Positions 5,394-55,960 of a DNA stretch of 64,000 bases are shown here, one piece after another (position 1 is the stretch's first letter; the number at the start of each line of letters is the position of its first letter). The notes beneath the pieces were generated by a model that saw nothing but the letters and a program-made list of their open reading frames with translations, ran no database searches and had not been told where the DNA came from. The stretch is taken from the NCBI RefSeq assembly GCF_001194135.2, contig NC_069001.1, forward strand, positions 24,392,957 through 24,456,956, written 5' to 3'. A program made the translations under genes and the position numbers. Source of the DNA: Octopus bimaculoides. Lineage: Eukaryota.

Positions 5394-5482
5394 TGCAGTA
5401 CGCACGTTTCATGCTACTTCAATTTATTTAAGTAATGTGAGCATTACCTTAAATGCAATATGAAGAGCAATCTTCAGCTGCA
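5394..5482 (-). ncRNA. Type I hammerhead ribozyme motif with long helix II
   Basis: Minus strand reads ugcag-CUGAAGA-[60-nt helix II: ugcu/agca, cuuca/ugaag, auuuaag(g)uaaug/cauuacuuaaau]-GAAA-cgugcg-UA-cugca. Helix I is 5 perfect bp; cleavage triplet GUA. Confidence 0.75.
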
Positions 5483-6785
5483 CGAAAAAATGTAGAAAAA
5501 AAGACATATTACAAATGTGGCAACATATTAAAACCAAGTGGGAGAGAGCAGAGGAAGAATATATAAGTCCATCTTGACATAGCATGGTCTATCTGGTCAT
5601 TGTCCTGATTGGTTTTGAAGAACAACGAAAGTTTTCTTTACTAGGAAATATTTGATTATTGGAAAGCAAAAGTTGTTGAAAATCTGCTTCAATGAATTTT
5701 GTCTAATATCAGAAAAGCATGAAAAAGTAGACATTATTATAATGATGAGGAAATTGATGACCTTCCTGACTCACACAGACTCACATATATATACACATGC
5801 AAATGACTAGGATGCATAATTGCATACAAAGCAATCTGCGATTGCTGCAGTAGAAAATTTTGGTTGTGAATAAAAGTCCATTCACCTCTTGATTTTCAAT
5901 TAAACATATATATATATATATATATATATATNNNNNNNNNNNNNNNNNNNNNNNNNNNNNNNNNNNNNNNNNNNNNNNNNNNNNNNNNNNNNNNNNNNNN
6001 NNNNNNNNNNNNNNNNNNNNNNNNNNNNNNNNNNNNNNNNNNNNNNNNNNNNNNNNNNNNNNNNNNNNNNNNNNNNNNNNNNNNNNNNNNNNNNNNNNNN
6101 NNNNNNNNNNNNNNNNNNNNNNNNNNNNNNNNNNNNNNNNNNNNNNNNNNNNNNNNNNNNNNNNNNNNNNNNNNNNNNNNNNNNNNNNNNNNNNNNNNNN
6201 NNNNNNNNNNNNNNNNNNNNNNNNNNNNNNNNNNNNNNNNNNNNNNNNNNNNNNNNNNNNNNNNNNNNNNNNNNNNNNNNNNNNNNNNNNNNNNNNNNNN
6301 NNNNNNNNNNNNNNNNNNNNNNNNNNNNNNNNNNNNNNNNNNNNNNNNNNNNNNNNNNNNNNNNNNNNNNNNNNNNNNNNNNNNNNNNNNNNNNNNNNNN
6401 NNNNNNNNNNNNNNNNNNNNNNNNNNNNNNNNNNNNNNNNNNNNNNNNNNNNNNNNNNNNNNNNNNNNNNNNNNNNNNNNNNNNNNNNNNNNNNNNNNNN
6501 NNNNNNNNNNNNNNNNNNNNNNNNNNNNNNNNNNNNNNNNNNNNNNNNNNNNNNNNNNNNNNNNNNNNNNNNNNNNNNNNNNNNNNNNNNNNNNNNNNNN
6601 NNNNNNNNNNNNNNNNNNNNNNNNNNNNNNTATATATATATATACATACATATATACATATATACACATATATATATATTTATATATGTACATATATATA
6701 TGTATGTATACATACATATATACATATATACATACATACACACACACACGCACACACACATATATATAGGTACAGAGTGAGTGTT

Positions 6786-6918
6786 TGGTTCTGAGTTCAG
6801 TCTCACTGCATGGCACATTGGGTAAGTGCCTTCTCCTATAGTCTCAGGACTACCAAAGCCTTGTGAATGGATTTGGTAGATGGAAACTGAAAGAAGCCTG
6901 TCATAATTTATGTGTGTA

Positions 6919-6956
<38 letters not shown>

Positions 6957-51590: not shown

Positions 51591-53392
51591 AAGGAGGGGT
51601 AATGATTGAGATAGCAAGAGGAGAAGGTAGTTTAGTAATATGTACATGAGAGATACATTTGTCTCTTTCCTCCAACTCATGTATTCGCATGCCCACTGCG
51701 TATTTATAGACATCAGGTTAAAGAGAAAAGATACAATTGCTCGACCTGCTAGAAGTAGTAGCCAAATCTCCCTCTTAGGTAAAAGCCACACATTGGATAA
51801 TGTAACTAAATGAAAGAGACAGGATGGTCACAGCTGAGCTGGGGCTAAATTGCAACACTCAGTATACATACATACATACGTACCTACCTACATACATACA
51901 TACGTACATGCATATATACATACATACATGCGTACATACCTACCTACGTATGTACGTGCGTACATACGTACCTACCTACCTACCCACATACATGCAAACA
52001 TGCATACATGCATATGTACATACATATGTACATATATTCGTAAGTACGTTTGTACATATATACATGCATACATATATTCTTTCGTACATACATACATAAA
52101 TACATGCAATGCATGTGTACATATGAACATACATTCATATGTACGTGCGTACGTACATACATACAGGCATGAATGCATACGTACGTACATACATTCTTAT
52201 ATAGAGACATATAGAAGCAGTATTGTTGTTCATTAAGAAACAGAGTAAAAGAGAGAAGCAGAGTATATTTGAGAAAGACAGAGGGACAAAGAGACTAGTG
52301 TGTATAGGTATGTCAGAGGGAGATATACAGATGGCGCTCTTAGAGAGAGAAAAAATGAGAGAGATAAGACCATTGCTCCATACACAGAAACATATACACA
52401 AACATTTACTGGTGTCACGGAATCATTATCATATGCAAATTTGGATAGAGTGTTAGGTAGAGAGAGGGAGAGAGACAGACGGACAAACAGAAAGACAGAG
52501 GAACGGTGGGTGTGGGGAGGAGTGAGTGGATTGTGGGAGGTGTTGGAAGGAGAAAGCTTAAATTCTCATGATAATAAATTTTGCTCATGATTAGCAAGTC
52601 TACCAATTAGAATAATTTAGTTTCAATTACATGCTTCATGAATGTTAAACTTGAATATACGGTGTGGGTTATGTCTTCGAAAGTATCGACCGAAAACTCT
52701 CATGTGTGTATCAGGTGCATACACACATGCACAAACACACACACACACATACACAAAACCACAGAGAGAGGAAGAGAGAGTAAAAGAGAGAGGGAGAAAG
52801 AAAGAGAGTGAACGAGATGCATATATTTACACACACATGCACATAGCGAGAGAGAGAGAGAGAGAAGGTGAAAGAGGGAGAGAGAATGAGATGTATATAT
52901 CTACACACATGTATGCACACACATACACATAGCCAGAGAGAGAGAGAGAAAGAGAGAAGGTGAAAGAGAGAGAGAGAGAGAGGAGGTGAGAGAAAGTGAA
53001 AGTGAGAGAGAGAGAGAGAGAGAGAGAATGAGATGCATATATTTACACACATGTATACACACCCACAGACACACATATAGTGTATGTTTGTGAGTATATA
53101 TAAAATTATACATGTTATGAATATAATTATGTATGTATGTATTTGTACCTACATATACATATATCCATACATTAGAGTATATCCATATGTGTATGTGTGT
53201 ATAAGCACACACCACAATGCAAGCTGAAGGCGAAACAAAAACACAACTGCAGCGATTTATGCGTTTACCTTGTATTTTATTACTTCGGATTAAAAAAAAA
53301 TAGACTTCAAAAAATGAAGAACACTTAAATTTGATCCGCACTGATATATGGTGGGGTTCTCACCTGATCGGAATTGTGATATTCTTTTCTAC

Positions 53393-54635
53393 TCACTCTA
53401 GGCACAAGGCCTGAAGTTTTGGGGGAAGGGGACAGTCGATTAGATCAACTCCAGTATGCAACTGGTGCTGAATTTATCATACCCGAAAGATGGAAGGCAA
53501 AGTCGACCTCAGCAGAATTCGAACTCAGAATGTAAAGACAGACAAAATACCGCTAAGCATTTCTCCCGGCGTGCTAACGTTTCTGCCAGCTCACCGCCTT
53601 AAAATATTCTTTTCTATTCTAGGCACAAGGCCTGAAATTTTGAGGGAGCAGGCCAGTCGATTAGATCGACCCCAGTATGCAACTGGTACTTAATTTATCG
53701 ACCCCGAAAGGATGAAAGGCAAAGTCGACTTCACAGAATCAAATTAGCTATAACTACATTAATTAAGGTGACAAAGCTGGCAAAATTCTTAGTGGCATTT
53801 CGGCCGTCTTTATGTTCTAAGTTCAAATTCCGTCCAGGCCGACTTTGCCTTTCATCTTTCTGGGTCGATAAAATATGTACTAGTTGAGTGCTGAGGGTCG
53901 ATGTAATTGGCTCATCCCCACTCCCACCAAATTGCTGGCCTTGTGGCAAAATTTAAAACCAATATTATTATATTAATTAAGGCAGCGAGTTCGCAGAATC
54001 GTTAGCATGCTGAAAATACTCAGCGGTATTTCCACAGTCTTAACTTTCTGAGTTCAAATCCTTCCAGAGTCTACTTTGCATCTCATCTTTTTGGGATCAA
54101 TAAAATAAGTACCAGTTGTCTACTGGGGTCAATGTAATTGACATGACTCCACCCCTGAACTTGCTGGTCCTTTCATTAATTAAGGCAGCGAGCTGGCAGA
54201 AAAACTTTAGCACGCTGGACAAAAATGTTTAACGGCATTTCATCTGTCTTTACGTTCTGAGTTCAAATGTTACTAAAGTCAACTTTGTCTTTCGTCCTTG
54301 TGGGGTAAATACCAGTTGAGTACTAAGGGTCAATGTAACTGTCTTACCCACTCCTCTGAAATTGCTGGCTTTGCTCCAACATTTGAAACTAATATTATTA
54401 CATTAATTAGCCAATTAATCAAAGGCAGTGATCTGGTAGAATCATTAGCACATCTGACAAAATCCAAAGCAACATTTCTTCTGGGTTTACGTTCTGATTT
54501 CAAATACTACCGAGGTCAGCTTCGCCTTTCATTCCTTGTGAGGTCAATAAAACAAGTACCAGATGAACACTGGAGTTGATGTAATCGATTTGCACCAGCG
54601 CCTAAATTTGCTGACCTTGAATTAAAATTTGAGAC
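53393..54635. mobile_element. Cluster of six Meta-like SINEs (two on minus, four head-to-tail on plus)
   Basis: Minus copies at 53393-53601 and 53615-53735; plus copies start near 53762, 53977, 54179 and 54420. Confidence 0.85.
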
Positions 54636-55271
54636 TAATTCATTTAATAACCGATTAATTTAACGCAGGTATTGTCAGTTGGTGATGGAAAGATATATTT
54701 TAATATAAGATTATTTTCCTTAATCATCGAATTTTCAATATTCCCTACTGTATATATTAGGGGAGGCTACGACTATTCTCCAGATATTTCTTTTTAATGG
54801 AAGAAGCACAAATATCTCTCTTAGCATAAGTATGCAATTTAAAAATATTTCTTGCGGCGTAAAATCCTGAGCAATCATTGCATGCAAAACGGTGCACCAG
54901 GCATTTCCACAGGTACATACTCGAAGTGTTGGTGGTAGAGTGAGCCAGTTACCGAGTAGCGGACTAATACTTAGGCGAACCCAGGTGAAAAAAGTCCCAA
55001 GTAAAAAATGTCGCTGGGAAAAAGTCACGGAAAAGAAGTTCATCCAATGCGATGTGATCAACAAAAAGGAAAAAAAAAAGTCAGAATCCAACTCAGAGAC
55101 ACAGTGTCATTAAGATGTCTTATGCTGTTAGTAATACACCTGTTTCTGGAATATGGCAAAAACTGACTTTATCATGAGAACTCAGTATGAGATTGTAACT
55201 TTCTCATTTAGAGGATAAGGTTCCAAGGATTACAAGTTTAAAGAGCAATGTGCTGTAGCTACTCTATAAAT

Positions 55272-55960
55272 ATTATAGCTAATTAACATAATAGGGTAAA
55301 AATTTGATATTAATTAATATCAATTTAATACCATGAAACTAGCACATTAAAAGAATCAGAATGTTCAGGAAAAATTTTTTGGAGATCCTAAAAGGATTAT
55401 AGTACTTGTGTATATAAAAGTGACCAGCAAGTGGTCTGGTAATATGCTAGAAAAAGATCACTTAAAAAATTCTCAAAGAAAGATTCAGCGGAGCAAAATC
55501 AGGCGGGCGAGACCAGTGAAAATTATAAATACCTCGGTTATCTGTAGACTATAGTTTCAAAATCAATGCTTCCAAATTAAAGTATCTATTTATCATCAGT
55601 ACAAATTGCCGATATTATTATAATCGAACAGAATCTCGTGCTAGTTGTCTCCGACCAGTGCAAACGTGCACGTGATTCTATCCATTATAAAGATTAAAAT
55701 TCAAAAGTCTTAGTTTTGGCGCACTCTACAGAAAATAATTTCTGATTTGAATTTACCAACTTTGAGAAATGTGATTATGGTTAATTAACATAATGGGGTA
55801 AGAATTCGATATTAATTAATATCAATTTAATACAAGGAAACTAGCACATTAAAAGAATCAGAAGGTTCAGGAAAAAAATTTTGGAGATCCTAAAAGGATT
55901 ATAGTACTTGTGTATATAAAAGTGACCTACTGGTCACTTTTATATACACAAGTACTATAA
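55272..55960 (-). mobile_element. Terminally redundant hammerhead-containing unit (502-bp period) with terminal fold-back
   Basis: About 154-bp direct repeats at 55272-55425 and 55774-55927, with a hammerhead between them and a 29-bp perfect hairpin at 55899-55960. Confidence 0.65.
55542..55604 (-). ncRNA. Type I hammerhead ribozyme
   Basis: Minus strand uugua-CUGAUGA-[34-nt helix II, 11 of 14 positions paired]-GAAA-cuauag-UC-uacag. Helix III is the palindrome ACUAUAGU; GUC cleavage between 55547 and 55546. Confidence 0.85.

What the first reader, a model, noticed from the sequence alone, without database searches (positions are those of the whole stretch)
5394..55604. Four unrelated hammerhead ribozymes in one 64-kb window, sharing a dimer-type architecture
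Seen: four sequence-unrelated motifs (5394-5482 minus, 12426-12470 plus, 36226-36268 plus, 55542-55604 minus). Each has a full CUGANGA/GAAA/NUH core, a paired helix I, and a loop-less helix III that is self-complementary (ACGUGCGU with G.U pairs, AGUACGUACU, ACAUGU, ACUAUAGU). Three have a mismatch at the first helix II pair (U.U, C.A, U.U). Known: minimal type I hammerheads with palindromic helix III occur in Penelope-like elements and metazoan non-LTR retrozymes and cleave as dimers. Inference: this genome may carry several high-copy families of ribozyme-bearing non-autonomous retroelements or circular RNAs, possibly with a lineage-specific core variant. I cannot tell whether these families are already catalogued.
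Basis: partly seen in the sequence, partly recalled or inferred. Interest (0 to 1): 0.88.

Follow-up and report, generated by a model that had tools for sequence, protein, structure and literature searches.

The report
Four solo hammerhead ribozymes, octopus DNA
This stretch of octopus genome holds four real but unrelated copies of a small self-cutting RNA motif (the hammerhead ribozyme), of the short, pair-forming kind already known from Penelope-like jumping genes and their non-coding derivatives, so it is a sound but mostly ordinary finding.

Summary
All four sites carry an intact hammerhead core (CUGANGA, GAAA, A15.1-U16.1, H17), a 5-7 bp helix I, a helix II and a self-complementary helix III. 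A descriptor covering them finds exactly these four. It expects 0.0045 hits per dinucleotide-shuffled window and gives 0 hits for 539 permuted decoy cores on the real sequence.

The "loop-less palindromic helix III" is the published metazoan type-I design: a 1-3 bp stem with a palindromic tetraloop, which forms double hammerheads. RNAcofold predicts that double hammerhead as the homodimer minimum-energy fold for three of the four.

The window is octopus DNA, a genus rich in Penelope-like elements. Each motif is a solo copy. None lies in a tandem array, none has RT or GIY-YIG coding remnants within 2.5 kb, and none has a paralogue in the window. One sits in a 502-bp unit present as 1.3 tandem copies with an 18-nt flanking repeat, which looks like a retroelement insertion.

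The U.U mismatch at the base of helix II is already known from axolotl HHR_Amex2, so it is not lineage-specific. It is still notable that none of the four has the usual G10.1-C11.1 pair.

None reaches an Rfam gathering score. High copy number could not be tested because no octopus genome was available. Verdict: new members of a known kind, of modest interest.

The parts
5394..5482 (-). H1: type-I hammerhead. Helix I 5 bp, core CUGAAGA, long helix II arm (60 nt) with a U.U at its base, GAAA, helix III ACGUGCGU (2 bp plus GUGC tetraloop, or an 8-bp duplex in a dimer). Predicted cleavage 3' of A17 between 5399 and 5398.
   Evidence: Sequence; descriptor hit; Rfam Hammerhead_1 at 14.1 bits, below gathering score 34; homodimer minimum-energy fold is a double hammerhead at -52.2 versus 2 x -22.9 kcal/mol.
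12426..12470 (+). H2: the most canonical of the four. Helix I 5 bp, CUGAUGA, helix II AUGCC/GGCAU with AAUA loop (A10.1-U11.1), GAAA, helix III AGUACGUACU (3 bp plus ACGU tetraloop, or a 10-bp duplex in a dimer). Predicted cleavage between 12465 and 12466.
   Evidence: Sequence; descriptor hit; Rfam Hammerhead_HH9 at 17 bits, E 0.059, below gathering score 52; homodimer double hammerhead at -35.3 versus 2 x -10.2 kcal/mol.
36226..36268 (+). H3: helix I 6 bp with no mismatch, CUGAUGA, C.A mismatch then a 3-bp GAG/CUC helix II with a 6-nt loop, GAAA, helix III ACAUGU (1 bp plus CAUG tetraloop). Predicted cleavage between 36262 and 36263. This is the weakest helix II of the four.
   Evidence: Sequence; descriptor hit; no correctly registered Rfam hammerhead match; in the dimer fold, helices III and I form in trans but helix II does not.
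55540..55606 (-). H4: helix I 7 bp (one G.U), CUGAUGA, AU-rich helix II arm with a U.U at its base, GAAA, helix III ACUAUAGU (2 bp plus UAUA tetraloop). Predicted cleavage between 55547 and 55546.
   Evidence: Sequence; descriptor hit; only weak Rfam noise, namely RAGATH-1 hammerhead at 13 bits and C/D snoRNA models at E 2-7; monomer minimum free energy only -4.7 kcal/mol; homodimer double hammerhead at -16.0 versus 2 x -4.7 kcal/mol.
55272..55927 (-). H4's host element: a 502-bp non-coding unit present as 1.3 tandem copies. Direct repeats 55774-55927 and 55272-55425 are 94% identical, with the hammerhead in the unique part between them.
   Evidence: blastn self-comparison; the repeat finder family D1, spacing 502; sequence.
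55899..55960 (.). Perfect 29-bp inverted repeat with a 4-nt spacer at the upstream end of the H4 unit. The outer arm is an inverted copy of the first 29 nt of the unit.
   Evidence: the repeat finder I3, 100% complementary. Craig et al. 2021 describe inverted 5'-truncated copies next to the upstream pseudo-LTR of PLE insertions. The link between the two is inference.
55955..55972 (.). 18-nt sequence (CTATAAATATTATATCTA on the + strand) repeated at 55264-55281 (17 of 18 identical), at the two outer edges of the H4 element. Candidate target-site duplication.
Evidence: the repeat finder D3; sequence. The repeat partly overlaps element sequence, so its exact length is uncertain.
5334..5931 (-). 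H1's contiguous block: 545 bp of sequence unique in the window (5361-5905), bounded by (AT)14 at 5334-5360 and (AT)13 at 5906-5931. The hammerhead lies 33 nt from the 3' end on the minus strand.
   Evidence: TRF; gap map. PLEs favour (TA)n targets and carry the hammerhead near the 3' end (PMC8557442). This is suggestive only, because both (AT)n runs abut assembly gaps.
12384..12422 (+). 19-bp hairpin (89% complementary, 1-nt loop) ending 3 nt upstream of H2. An 18-nt unit repeated 2.3 times (12468-12509) begins at the end of H2's helix I.
   Evidence: the repeat finder I2; TRF. Role unknown.

Best explanation
The four sites are genuine type-I hammerhead ribozyme motifs of the metazoan short-helix-III class. 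They were left in an octopus genome by four different retroelement families, either truncated or solo pseudo-LTR pieces of Penelope-like elements or their non-coding, retrozyme-like derivatives.

Mechanism, taken from the published family and inferred here: when transcribed, one copy folds helices I and II, but its helix III (1-3 bp plus a palindromic tetraloop) is too weak. Two RNAs of the same family, from tandem units or in trans, pair their self-complementary helix III into a 6-10 bp duplex and swap helix I strands. This builds two active sites that cut 3' of H17 and leave 5'-OH and 2',3'-cyclic phosphate ends. In active elements those ends delimit unit-length RNA, which a tRNA ligase can circularise and a PLE reverse transcriptase can copy.

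At these four loci there is one ribozyme each, so they cannot excise a unit by themselves. They are most likely inactive insertions whose motifs are still intact.

Shown here: motif integrity, non-randomness, the predicted dimer fold, solo status and octopus origin. Inferred: catalysis, parent element type and copy number.
For: - Non-randomness: 4 hits against 0.0045 expected from 2000 shuffles, and 0 hits for 539 decoy cores on the real sequence.
- All core positions are intact at all four sites.
- The helix III design matches the published description of metazoan type-I hammerheads: a 1-2 bp stem and a 2-4 nt palindromic loop, active as dimers (PMC4209133).
- In PLE surveys most motifs occur as single, highly heterogeneous copies attributed to truncated PLEs. 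That matches four unrelated solo copies.
- RNAcofold gives the double hammerhead as the minimum-energy homodimer for H1, H2 and H4, 6-15 kcal/mol below two monomers.
- Repeat-derived ORFs in the window match Octopus bimaculoides proteins at 75-87% identity. O. vulgaris has 31 recently active PLE families, 30 of them in the Penelope clade.
- H4 lies in a 502-bp unit with 1.3 tandem copies, an inverted 5' fragment and an 18-nt flanking repeat. This fits more-than-unit-length retrotransposition.
- H1's block is bounded by (AT)n, a preferred PLE target.
- The U.U mismatch at the helix II base is compatible with activity in axolotl HHR_Amex2.
Against: - No hammerhead Rfam model reaches its gathering score. 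The best are 17 bits against 52 for H2 and 14.1 against 34 for H1, and there is no proper match for H3 or H4.
- None of the four has the G10.1-C11.1 pair that Cervera and de la Pena call highly conserved, nor the single extra nucleotide 5' of it.
- Monomer folding energies are unremarkable, with z-scores from -1.8 to +1.0. H4 at -4.7 kcal/mol falls short of the -5 kcal/mol activity cut-off used by Li et al. 2026. H3's 3-bp helix II does not form in predicted folds.
- No RT or GIY-YIG remnant was found within 2.5 kb of any motif. No paralogues were available, so there is no covariation evidence and no direct link to a PLE.
- PLE hammerheads cleave poorly in vitro even as dimers.
Confidence: 0.78

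Rival explanations
1. The loci are active non-LTR retrozymes: tandem units that are transcribed, cut themselves at two hammerheads and yield small circular RNAs from these very sites.
For: They have the type-I hammerhead with a palindromic helix III, low GC and no coding capacity. H4's unit (502 bp, 1.3 copies) is near the 150-450 bp unit size reported for animal retrozymes.
Against: The operational definition needs at least two consecutive units, each with a complete hammerhead. Here each locus has one hammerhead, and neither TRF nor repeat finder shows a tandem array containing one. H4's second partial copy stops before the ribozyme.
Confidence: 0.07
2. The motifs are chance look-alikes in AT-rich, repeat-rich DNA.
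For: Rfam scores are far below gathering. Monomer stabilities are not exceptional. H1 and H4 have long, AU-rich helix II arms. The descriptor was written after seeing the hits.
Against: Four hits against 0.0045 expected. Zero hits for 539 decoy cores on the real sequence. Zero hits for all 27 single-mismatch cores. Poisson odds for four in one window are about 2e-11, which is still below 1e-6 after allowing for roughly 40,000 windows in a genome of this size.
Confidence: 0.02
3. The motifs are host-domesticated hammerheads acting in cis on cellular transcripts, like the intronic HH9 and HH10 of amniotes, and not transposon debris.
For: The cores are perfectly intact while no near-miss cores occur in the window. 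H2's best Rfam match is the HH9 model.
Against: The HH9 score of 17 bits is far below its gathering score of 52. No gene or exon context could be shown, and ORF fragments around the motifs have no Pfam hits. The four are unrelated in sequence and sit among SINE-like repeats and microsatellites. H4 has insertion signatures.
Confidence: 0.05
4. The motifs belong to SINE-like, pol III-driven retroposons carrying a hammerhead, as in Schistosoma Sm-alpha and Sj-alpha.
For: Octopus genomes hold hundreds of unclassified SINE families. The elements here are short and non-coding, and schistosome SINE-like elements carry hammerheads.
Against: ARAGORN finds no tRNA-like sequence anywhere in the window. 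The abundant SINE-like repeat family of the window has many copies here, and none carries or adjoins a hammerhead. The ribozyme lies near the 3' side of the unique segments at H1 and H2, which is not behind a 5' promoter module.
Confidence: 0.08

Closest known systems
Hammerheads in the pseudo-LTRs of Penelope-like elements, including 'min-HHRs' (Cervera and de la Pena 2014; Lunse, Weinberg and Breaker 2017, as cited in PMC6765202)
   Same: Type-I topology, a 4-7 bp helix I, and a very short helix III whose loop or 15.2-16.2 positions are palindromic. The dimer (double hammerhead) mode of action is also shared. So are the mostly solo copies scattered through the genome, the extreme sequence heterogeneity between families, and a host lineage rich in PLEs.
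   Different: No RT/GIY-YIG ORF or second pseudo-LTR is detectable nearby. The published consensus has one extra nucleotide after A9 followed by a highly conserved G10.1-C11.1. Here H2 has A-U, and H1, H3 and H4 have a two-sided mismatch (U.U, C.A, U.U). Helix II arms of 60 nt (H1) and 34 nt (H4) are much longer than the 6-8 bp stems described.
Metazoan non-LTR retrozymes (Cervera and de la Pena 2020; Li, Clavereau and Pollet 2026 preprint)
   Same: Non-coding, low-GC units of a few hundred bp carrying a type-I hammerhead with a 1-2 bp helix III and a palindromic tetraloop. H4's 502-bp unit is partly duplicated in tandem. They are proposed to derive from PLE pseudo-LTRs.
   Different: Retrozymes are defined by tandem arrays in which consecutive units each hold a hammerhead. 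None of the four loci meets this. Canonical retrozyme hammerheads keep loop 1-loop 2 contacts and score well with Rfam Hammerhead_1, and these do not.
Axolotl HHR_Amex2 (about 60,000 copies; PMC7229834)
   Same: A U.U mismatch at the base of helix II combined with a 2-bp helix III capped by a tetraloop, exactly as in H1 and H4. It is weak as a monomer and efficient as a dimer.
   Different: Amex2 sits in 350-bp satellite-like tandem repeats in a vertebrate, with recognisable loop-loop contacts. The octopus motifs are solo and unrelated in sequence.
Rfam Hammerhead_1 (RF00163) and Hammerhead_HH9 (RF02275)
   Same: Same catalytic core and three-helix junction. The alignments place the core correctly for H1 and H2.
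   Different: Scores of 14.1 and 17 bits are far below the gathering thresholds of 34 and 52. H3 and H4 are not matched in the right register.

Membership tests
Hammerhead ribozyme (general) | Conserved core: C3 U4 G5 A6 N7 G8 A9, G12 A13 A14, an A15.1-U16.1 pair, and H17 not G | tested here: met
   All positions are intact in all four motifs. No decoy core gives any hit.
Hammerhead ribozyme (general) | Three helices (I, II, III) around the core, in type-I topology with helix I open | tested here: met
   Helix I is 5, 5, 6 and 7 bp for H1, H2, H3 and H4. Helix II is 4, 5, 3 and 4 bp adjacent to the core. Helix III is self-complementary over 8, 10, 6 and 8 nt.
Hammerhead ribozyme (general) | G10.1-C11.1 pair closing helix II | tested here: not met
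   H2 has A-U, H1 and H4 have U.U, and H3 has C.A followed by G-C. A U.U variant is nevertheless active in axolotl, so this lowers expected activity without excluding it.
Hammerhead ribozyme (general) | Site-specific self-cleavage 3' of H17 | not testable with these tools
   Needs in vitro transcription or RNA end mapping.
Rfam hammerhead families (clan CL00010) | Bit score at or above the family's gathering threshold | tested here: not met
   No hit at gathering level. The best local scores are HH9 at 17 against 52 and Hammerhead_1 at 14.1 against 34. There is nothing valid for H3 or H4.
Dimer-type (double) hammerhead | Self-complementary helix III, so that two copies form an extended intermolecular helix III with swapped helix I | tested here: met
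   The palindromes are ACGUGCGU, AGUACGUACU, ACAUGU and ACUAUAGU. The RNAcofold homodimer minimum-energy fold is the double hammerhead for H1, H2 and H4, and partly so for H3.
Penelope-like element pseudo-LTR hammerhead | Location in direct repeats flanking an RT plus GIY-YIG ORF | tested here: not met
   Non-low-complexity ORF fragments of at least 40 aa within 2.5 kb of each motif have no Pfam match. The window has no long intact ORF. Solo or truncated copies are, however, the majority state in published surveys.
Penelope-like element pseudo-LTR hammerhead | Sequence homology of the flanks to a PLE pseudo-LTR consensus | not testable with these tools
   No octopus repeat library or genome was reachable.
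Non-LTR retrozyme | Tandem repeats of about 150-450 bp with a complete hammerhead in at least two consecutive units | tested here: not met
   There is one hammerhead per locus. TRF and the repeat finder show no array containing one. H4 has 1.3 copies of a 502-bp unit with a single ribozyme.
Non-LTR retrozyme | Expression as linear and circular unit-length RNA | not testable with these tools
   No transcriptome data were available.

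The most novel reading that the evidence does not exclude
Octopus, and perhaps coleoid cephalopods generally, may carry a very large and diverse population of hammerhead-bearing retroelements. Four unrelated families in about 60 kb would extrapolate to tens of thousands of motifs or more per genome. 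These ribozymes may systematically lack the canonical G10.1-C11.1 pair and instead use a pyrimidine-pyrimidine or C.A mismatch, or an A-U pair, at the base of helix II. That would be a clade-wide relaxed core variant. It escapes Rfam models and is not mentioned in the one octopus repeat paper checked here (PMC13282606).
Probability: 0.15. Interest if true: 0.5.

Novelty: new member of a known kind. Interest (0 to 1): 0.3.

Why it matters
The finding shows that minimal, dimer-type hammerheads are present and structurally intact in an octopus genome. Their local density is high, at four unrelated motifs in one window. All four escape the Rfam gathering thresholds, and the 2026 O. vulgaris repeat annotation paper contains neither the word "ribozyme" nor "retrozyme".

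If the pattern holds genome-wide, part of the large "unclassified SINE" or "unknown repeat" fraction of cephalopod genomes could be PLE-derived ribozyme elements. The absence of G10.1-C11.1 in all four would then give natural test cases for how much the helix II base pair matters in double hammerheads. By itself, however, this extends a well-described phenomenon to one more lineage.

Tried and rejected
- **Rfam on the whole window.** There were no hits at gathering level. At E up to 10, the 150 rows listed (of 222 matches) were mostly microsatellite-driven miRNA false positives and included no hammerhead.
- **C/D-box snoRNA reading of H4.** This was prompted by weak Rfam hits. I rejected it because there is no CUGA D box before the 3' stem and the E-values are 2-7.
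- **CRISPR-DR25 hit on the antisense of H2's helix II**. This is spurious.
- **Relaxed descriptors.** Allowing bulges, a looped helix III and a U3-A8 core added no credible hammerhead, only one AT-rich U3-A8 hit with a 2-bp helix II, at a stringency where decoy cores also score. Single-mismatch cores with the same helices gave 0 hits.
- **Search for paralogues or related DNA.**
  - Self-blastn of the window found no second copy of any locus.
  - Exact look-up of 10 ORFs found none in the collection.
  - A chimeric protein query built from all ORF fragments overlapping the four loci found no homologue.
  - Contig look-ups for the three octopus-like proteins returned nothing on record.
  - Pattern scans for H2 in the metagenome and viral collections gave 0 matches.
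- **Search for PLE coding remnants.** Pfam scans of ORF fragments around each motif found nothing.
- **Similarity among the four loci.** There is none beyond AT-rich low complexity.
- **tRNA-derived SINE heads.** None were found.
- **Lunse et al. 2017 (PMC5785218).** The paper is not held in the library, so it is cited only through reviews.

Full report
**1. The observation**

I read the four sites. Each has the complete hammerhead core (C3-U4-G5-A6-N7-G8-A9, G12-A13-A14, A15.1-U16.1, H17), a paired helix I and a helix II. The sequence between A15.1 and U16.1 is self-complementary.

| Motif | Position | Helix I | Core and base of helix II | Helix III and H17 |
|---|---|---|---|---|
| H1 | 5394-5482 (-) | UGCAG/CUGCA | CUGAAGA, U.U then UGCU/AGCA | ACGUGCGU, A17 |
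| H2 | 12426-12470 (+) | GAGGC/GCCUU | CUGAUGA, AUGCC-AAUA-GGCAU | AGUACGUACU, C17 |
| H3 | 36226-36268 (+) | UUCAGG/CCUGAA | CUGAUGA, C.A then GAG/CUC | ACAUGU, C17 |

**2. Assembly gaps**

The window has 16 runs of N. No motif spans or touches one. Each sits in a contiguous block: 5334-5931, 10746-12649, 34842-39437 and 47726-64000. Only the relative order and spacing of the four depend on scaffolding.

H1's block is a 598-bp island that begins and ends in (AT)n next to gaps. Four other gaps are flanked by near-identical duplicated sequence. These are probably unclosed contig overlaps. They do not involve the motifs.

**3. Chance**

- I wrote a descriptor with CUGANGA, a helix II of at least 3 bp that allows one mismatch at its base, GAAA, a gapless self-complementary helix III of 4-12 nt ending in U, H17 not G, and a helix I of at least 4 bp with G.U allowed. 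It finds exactly these four sites and nothing else.
- In 2000 dinucleotide-preserving shuffles made in 2-kb blocks, the mean was 0.0045 hits per window and never more than one.
- Real DNA has more palindromes than shuffles do, so I also kept the real sequence and permuted the core letters. This gave 180 permutations of CUGA.GA times 3 of GAA. All 539 decoys gave 0 hits, against 4 for the true core.
- Bare CUGANGA heptamers are at the expected number (29 against 29.0), so the signal is the full structure.
- The descriptor was written after the fact, but four against 0.0045 survives any reasonable correction, including a genome-wide one.
- Relaxing the descriptor (bulges, a looped helix III, the U3-A8 core) added no credible motif. 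Cores with a single mismatch gave none.

**4. What they are**

The "loop-less palindromic helix III" can also be read as a 1-3 bp stem closed by a palindromic tetraloop: GUGC, ACGU, CAUG and UAUA. That is the published design of metazoan type-I hammerheads. Helix III usually has a 1-2 bp stem capped by a small palindromic loop, which is too weak in a monomer, and two copies form a double hammerhead (Cervera and de la Pena 2014, PMC4209133; review PMC6765202).

The same paper reports thousands of such motifs per animal genome. They are mostly solo copies attributed to truncated Penelope-like elements, with extreme sequence heterogeneity.

RNAcofold of each motif with itself returns the textbook double hammerhead as the minimum-energy structure for three of the four. 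In that structure helix I is swapped between strands, helix II forms hairpins, and helix III is an extended intermolecular duplex.

| Motif | Homodimer (kcal/mol) | Two monomers (kcal/mol) |
|---|---|---|
| H1 | -52.2 | -45.8 |
| H2 | -35.3 | -20.4 |
| H4 | -16.0 | -9.4 |

H3 forms helices III and I in trans, but its 3-bp helix II does not form. Monomer stabilities are ordinary, with z-scores from -1.8 to +1.0. That is expected for this class.

**5. Organism and parent elements**

A query built from repeat-derived ORFs matched Octopus bimaculoides proteins at 75-87% identity over the SINE-like part. The window's 26-39% GC, its many TA/TG microsatellites and its dense SINE-like repeats fit this.

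A 2026 annotation of O. vulgaris lists Penelope-like elements as one of six TE orders. It reports 31 recently active families, 30 of them in the Penelope clade, and an older PLE expansion. The paper mentions neither ribozymes nor retrozymes (PMC13282606). Canonical PLE clades always carry hammerheads in their pseudo-LTRs, while Naiads, which survive only as remnants in cephalopods, do not (PMC8557442). Plausible autonomous partners therefore exist in this genus.

**6. Context of each locus**

- None of the four has a second copy in the window, although other repeat families have many copies there.
- The four are unrelated to each other.
- No tandem array contains a hammerhead.
- No ORF fragment within 2.5 kb matches any Pfam family, so there is no RT or GIY-YIG remnant nearby.
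- ARAGORN finds no tRNA-like SINE head.

H4 is the most informative locus.

- It lies in a 502-bp non-coding unit present as 1.3 tandem copies. The direct repeats 55774-55927 and 55272-55425 are 94% identical.
- Upstream there is a perfect 29-bp inverted copy of the unit's first 29 nt (55899-55960).
- An 18-nt sequence is repeated at both outer edges, with 17 of 18 positions identical.
- Partial tandems, adjacent inverted 5' fragments and more-than-unit-length copies are hallmarks of PLE-type insertion. I therefore read H4 as a non-autonomous PLE-derived insertion. This is an inference.

In H1 the hammerhead lies 33 nt from the 3' end of a 545-bp unique segment bounded by (AT)n. PLEs prefer (TA)n targets and carry the ribozyme near their 3' end. 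The gaps make this only suggestive.

H2 is preceded by a 19-bp hairpin and followed by an 18-nt unit repeated 2.3 times. I cannot assign either a role.

**7. How it most likely works**

The steps below are established for the family and inferred for these loci. Transcripts of the same family dimerise through helix III and cut 3' of H17. In active tandem elements this releases unit-length RNA, which RtcB-type ligase circularises and a PLE reverse transcriptase copies.

The predicted cleavage sites are 5399|5398 (-), 12465|12466 (+), 36262|36263 (+) and 55547|55546 (-). With one ribozyme per locus, these copies cannot excise themselves. They are best seen as inactive insertions with intact motifs.

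**8. Departures from the known consensus**

Cervera and de la Pena stress a conserved extra nucleotide after A9 and a highly conserved G10.1-C11.1. None of the four has G10.1-C11.1 flush with the core. H2 has A-U, H1 and H4 have U.U, and H3 has C.A followed by G-C.

The U.U variant is not new. [quoted passage not shown] It cleaves weakly as a monomer and efficiently as a dimer.

Four out of four lacking the canonical pair is still worth a genome-wide look. All four also fail Rfam thresholds, so routine annotation would miss them.

**9. Verdict**

These are new members of a known kind, and interest is modest. The decisive work is a whole-genome, decoy-controlled search in octopus assemblies together with monomer-against-dimer cleavage assays.

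Noticed in passing
window 7058-7378 and 7499-7819 (gap 7379-7498); also gaps 23020-23029, 46390-46399 and 47020-47725: The 321 nt left of the gap are 100% identical to the 321 nt right of it. The other three gaps show the same pattern over 65 nt (100%), 41 nt (93%) and 151 nt (98.7%). These look like unclosed contig overlaps, meaning artificial duplications and not real tandem repeats.
   Followed up: partly
window 4881-5287, 6786-7173, 21081-21504, 39155-39395 with 39573-39730, 56840-57219, and more than 15 further fragments: An abundant SINE-like repeat of about 400 bp at 74-94% identity between copies, often next to TG/TA microsatellites. Its translation (…SVYQIHSQGFGWP.AIVEDT.PRCHAVGLNPEPCG…) matches parts of annotated Octopus bimaculoides proteins, so it has been incorporated into gene models. 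No tRNA-like head was detected.
   Followed up: partly
window 11408-11798 and 48300-48690; window 34893-35156, 42396-42657, 17929-18178 and 7838-8123: Two further interspersed repeat families, one with a 391-bp pair at 90% identity and one of about 260 bp at 84-89%. Both are unclassified, and neither carries a hammerhead.
   Followed up: no
window 3870-4148 (+): Degenerate Tc1/mariner-type transposase C-terminal fragment (…LLLYDNACPH…HSPGLTSSDYHIFGLLK…). I recognised it by eye, and it is too decayed for a Pfam hit at E up to 0.01.
   Followed up: partly
window 1-626 (+) and about 13900-14400: ORF fragments resembling the C-terminal region of non-LTR (LINE) reverse-transcriptase proteins, with a Cys/His knuckle (…CCSCKSVDETIAHIMNKC…) and a …GRGTPRKIWDEVVKADL… motif. 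These are remnants only.
   Followed up: no
window-wide, for example 6697-6765, 9927-10039, 14560-14632, 29969-30039 and 52001-52073: Dozens of sub-threshold Rfam matches to mir-297, mir-466, mir-3149 and mir-1277 (up to 59 bits, gathering 81-100). All lie on TA/TG/CA microsatellites and are false positives caused by low complexity.
   Followed up: yes
window 55899-55960: Perfect 29-bp inverted repeat with a 4-nt spacer. This is an unusually clean hairpin for this genome. I interpret it as an inverted 5' fragment of the H4 element.
   Followed up: partly
most gap edges (5334, 5931, 6631, 9824, 10573, 12746, 15519, 30235, 30532, 39437): Most assembly gaps abut (TA)n or (TA/TG)n runs, so the assembly breaks at microsatellites. 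Any inference about insertions into (TA)n, such as for H1, is limited by this.
   Followed up: yes
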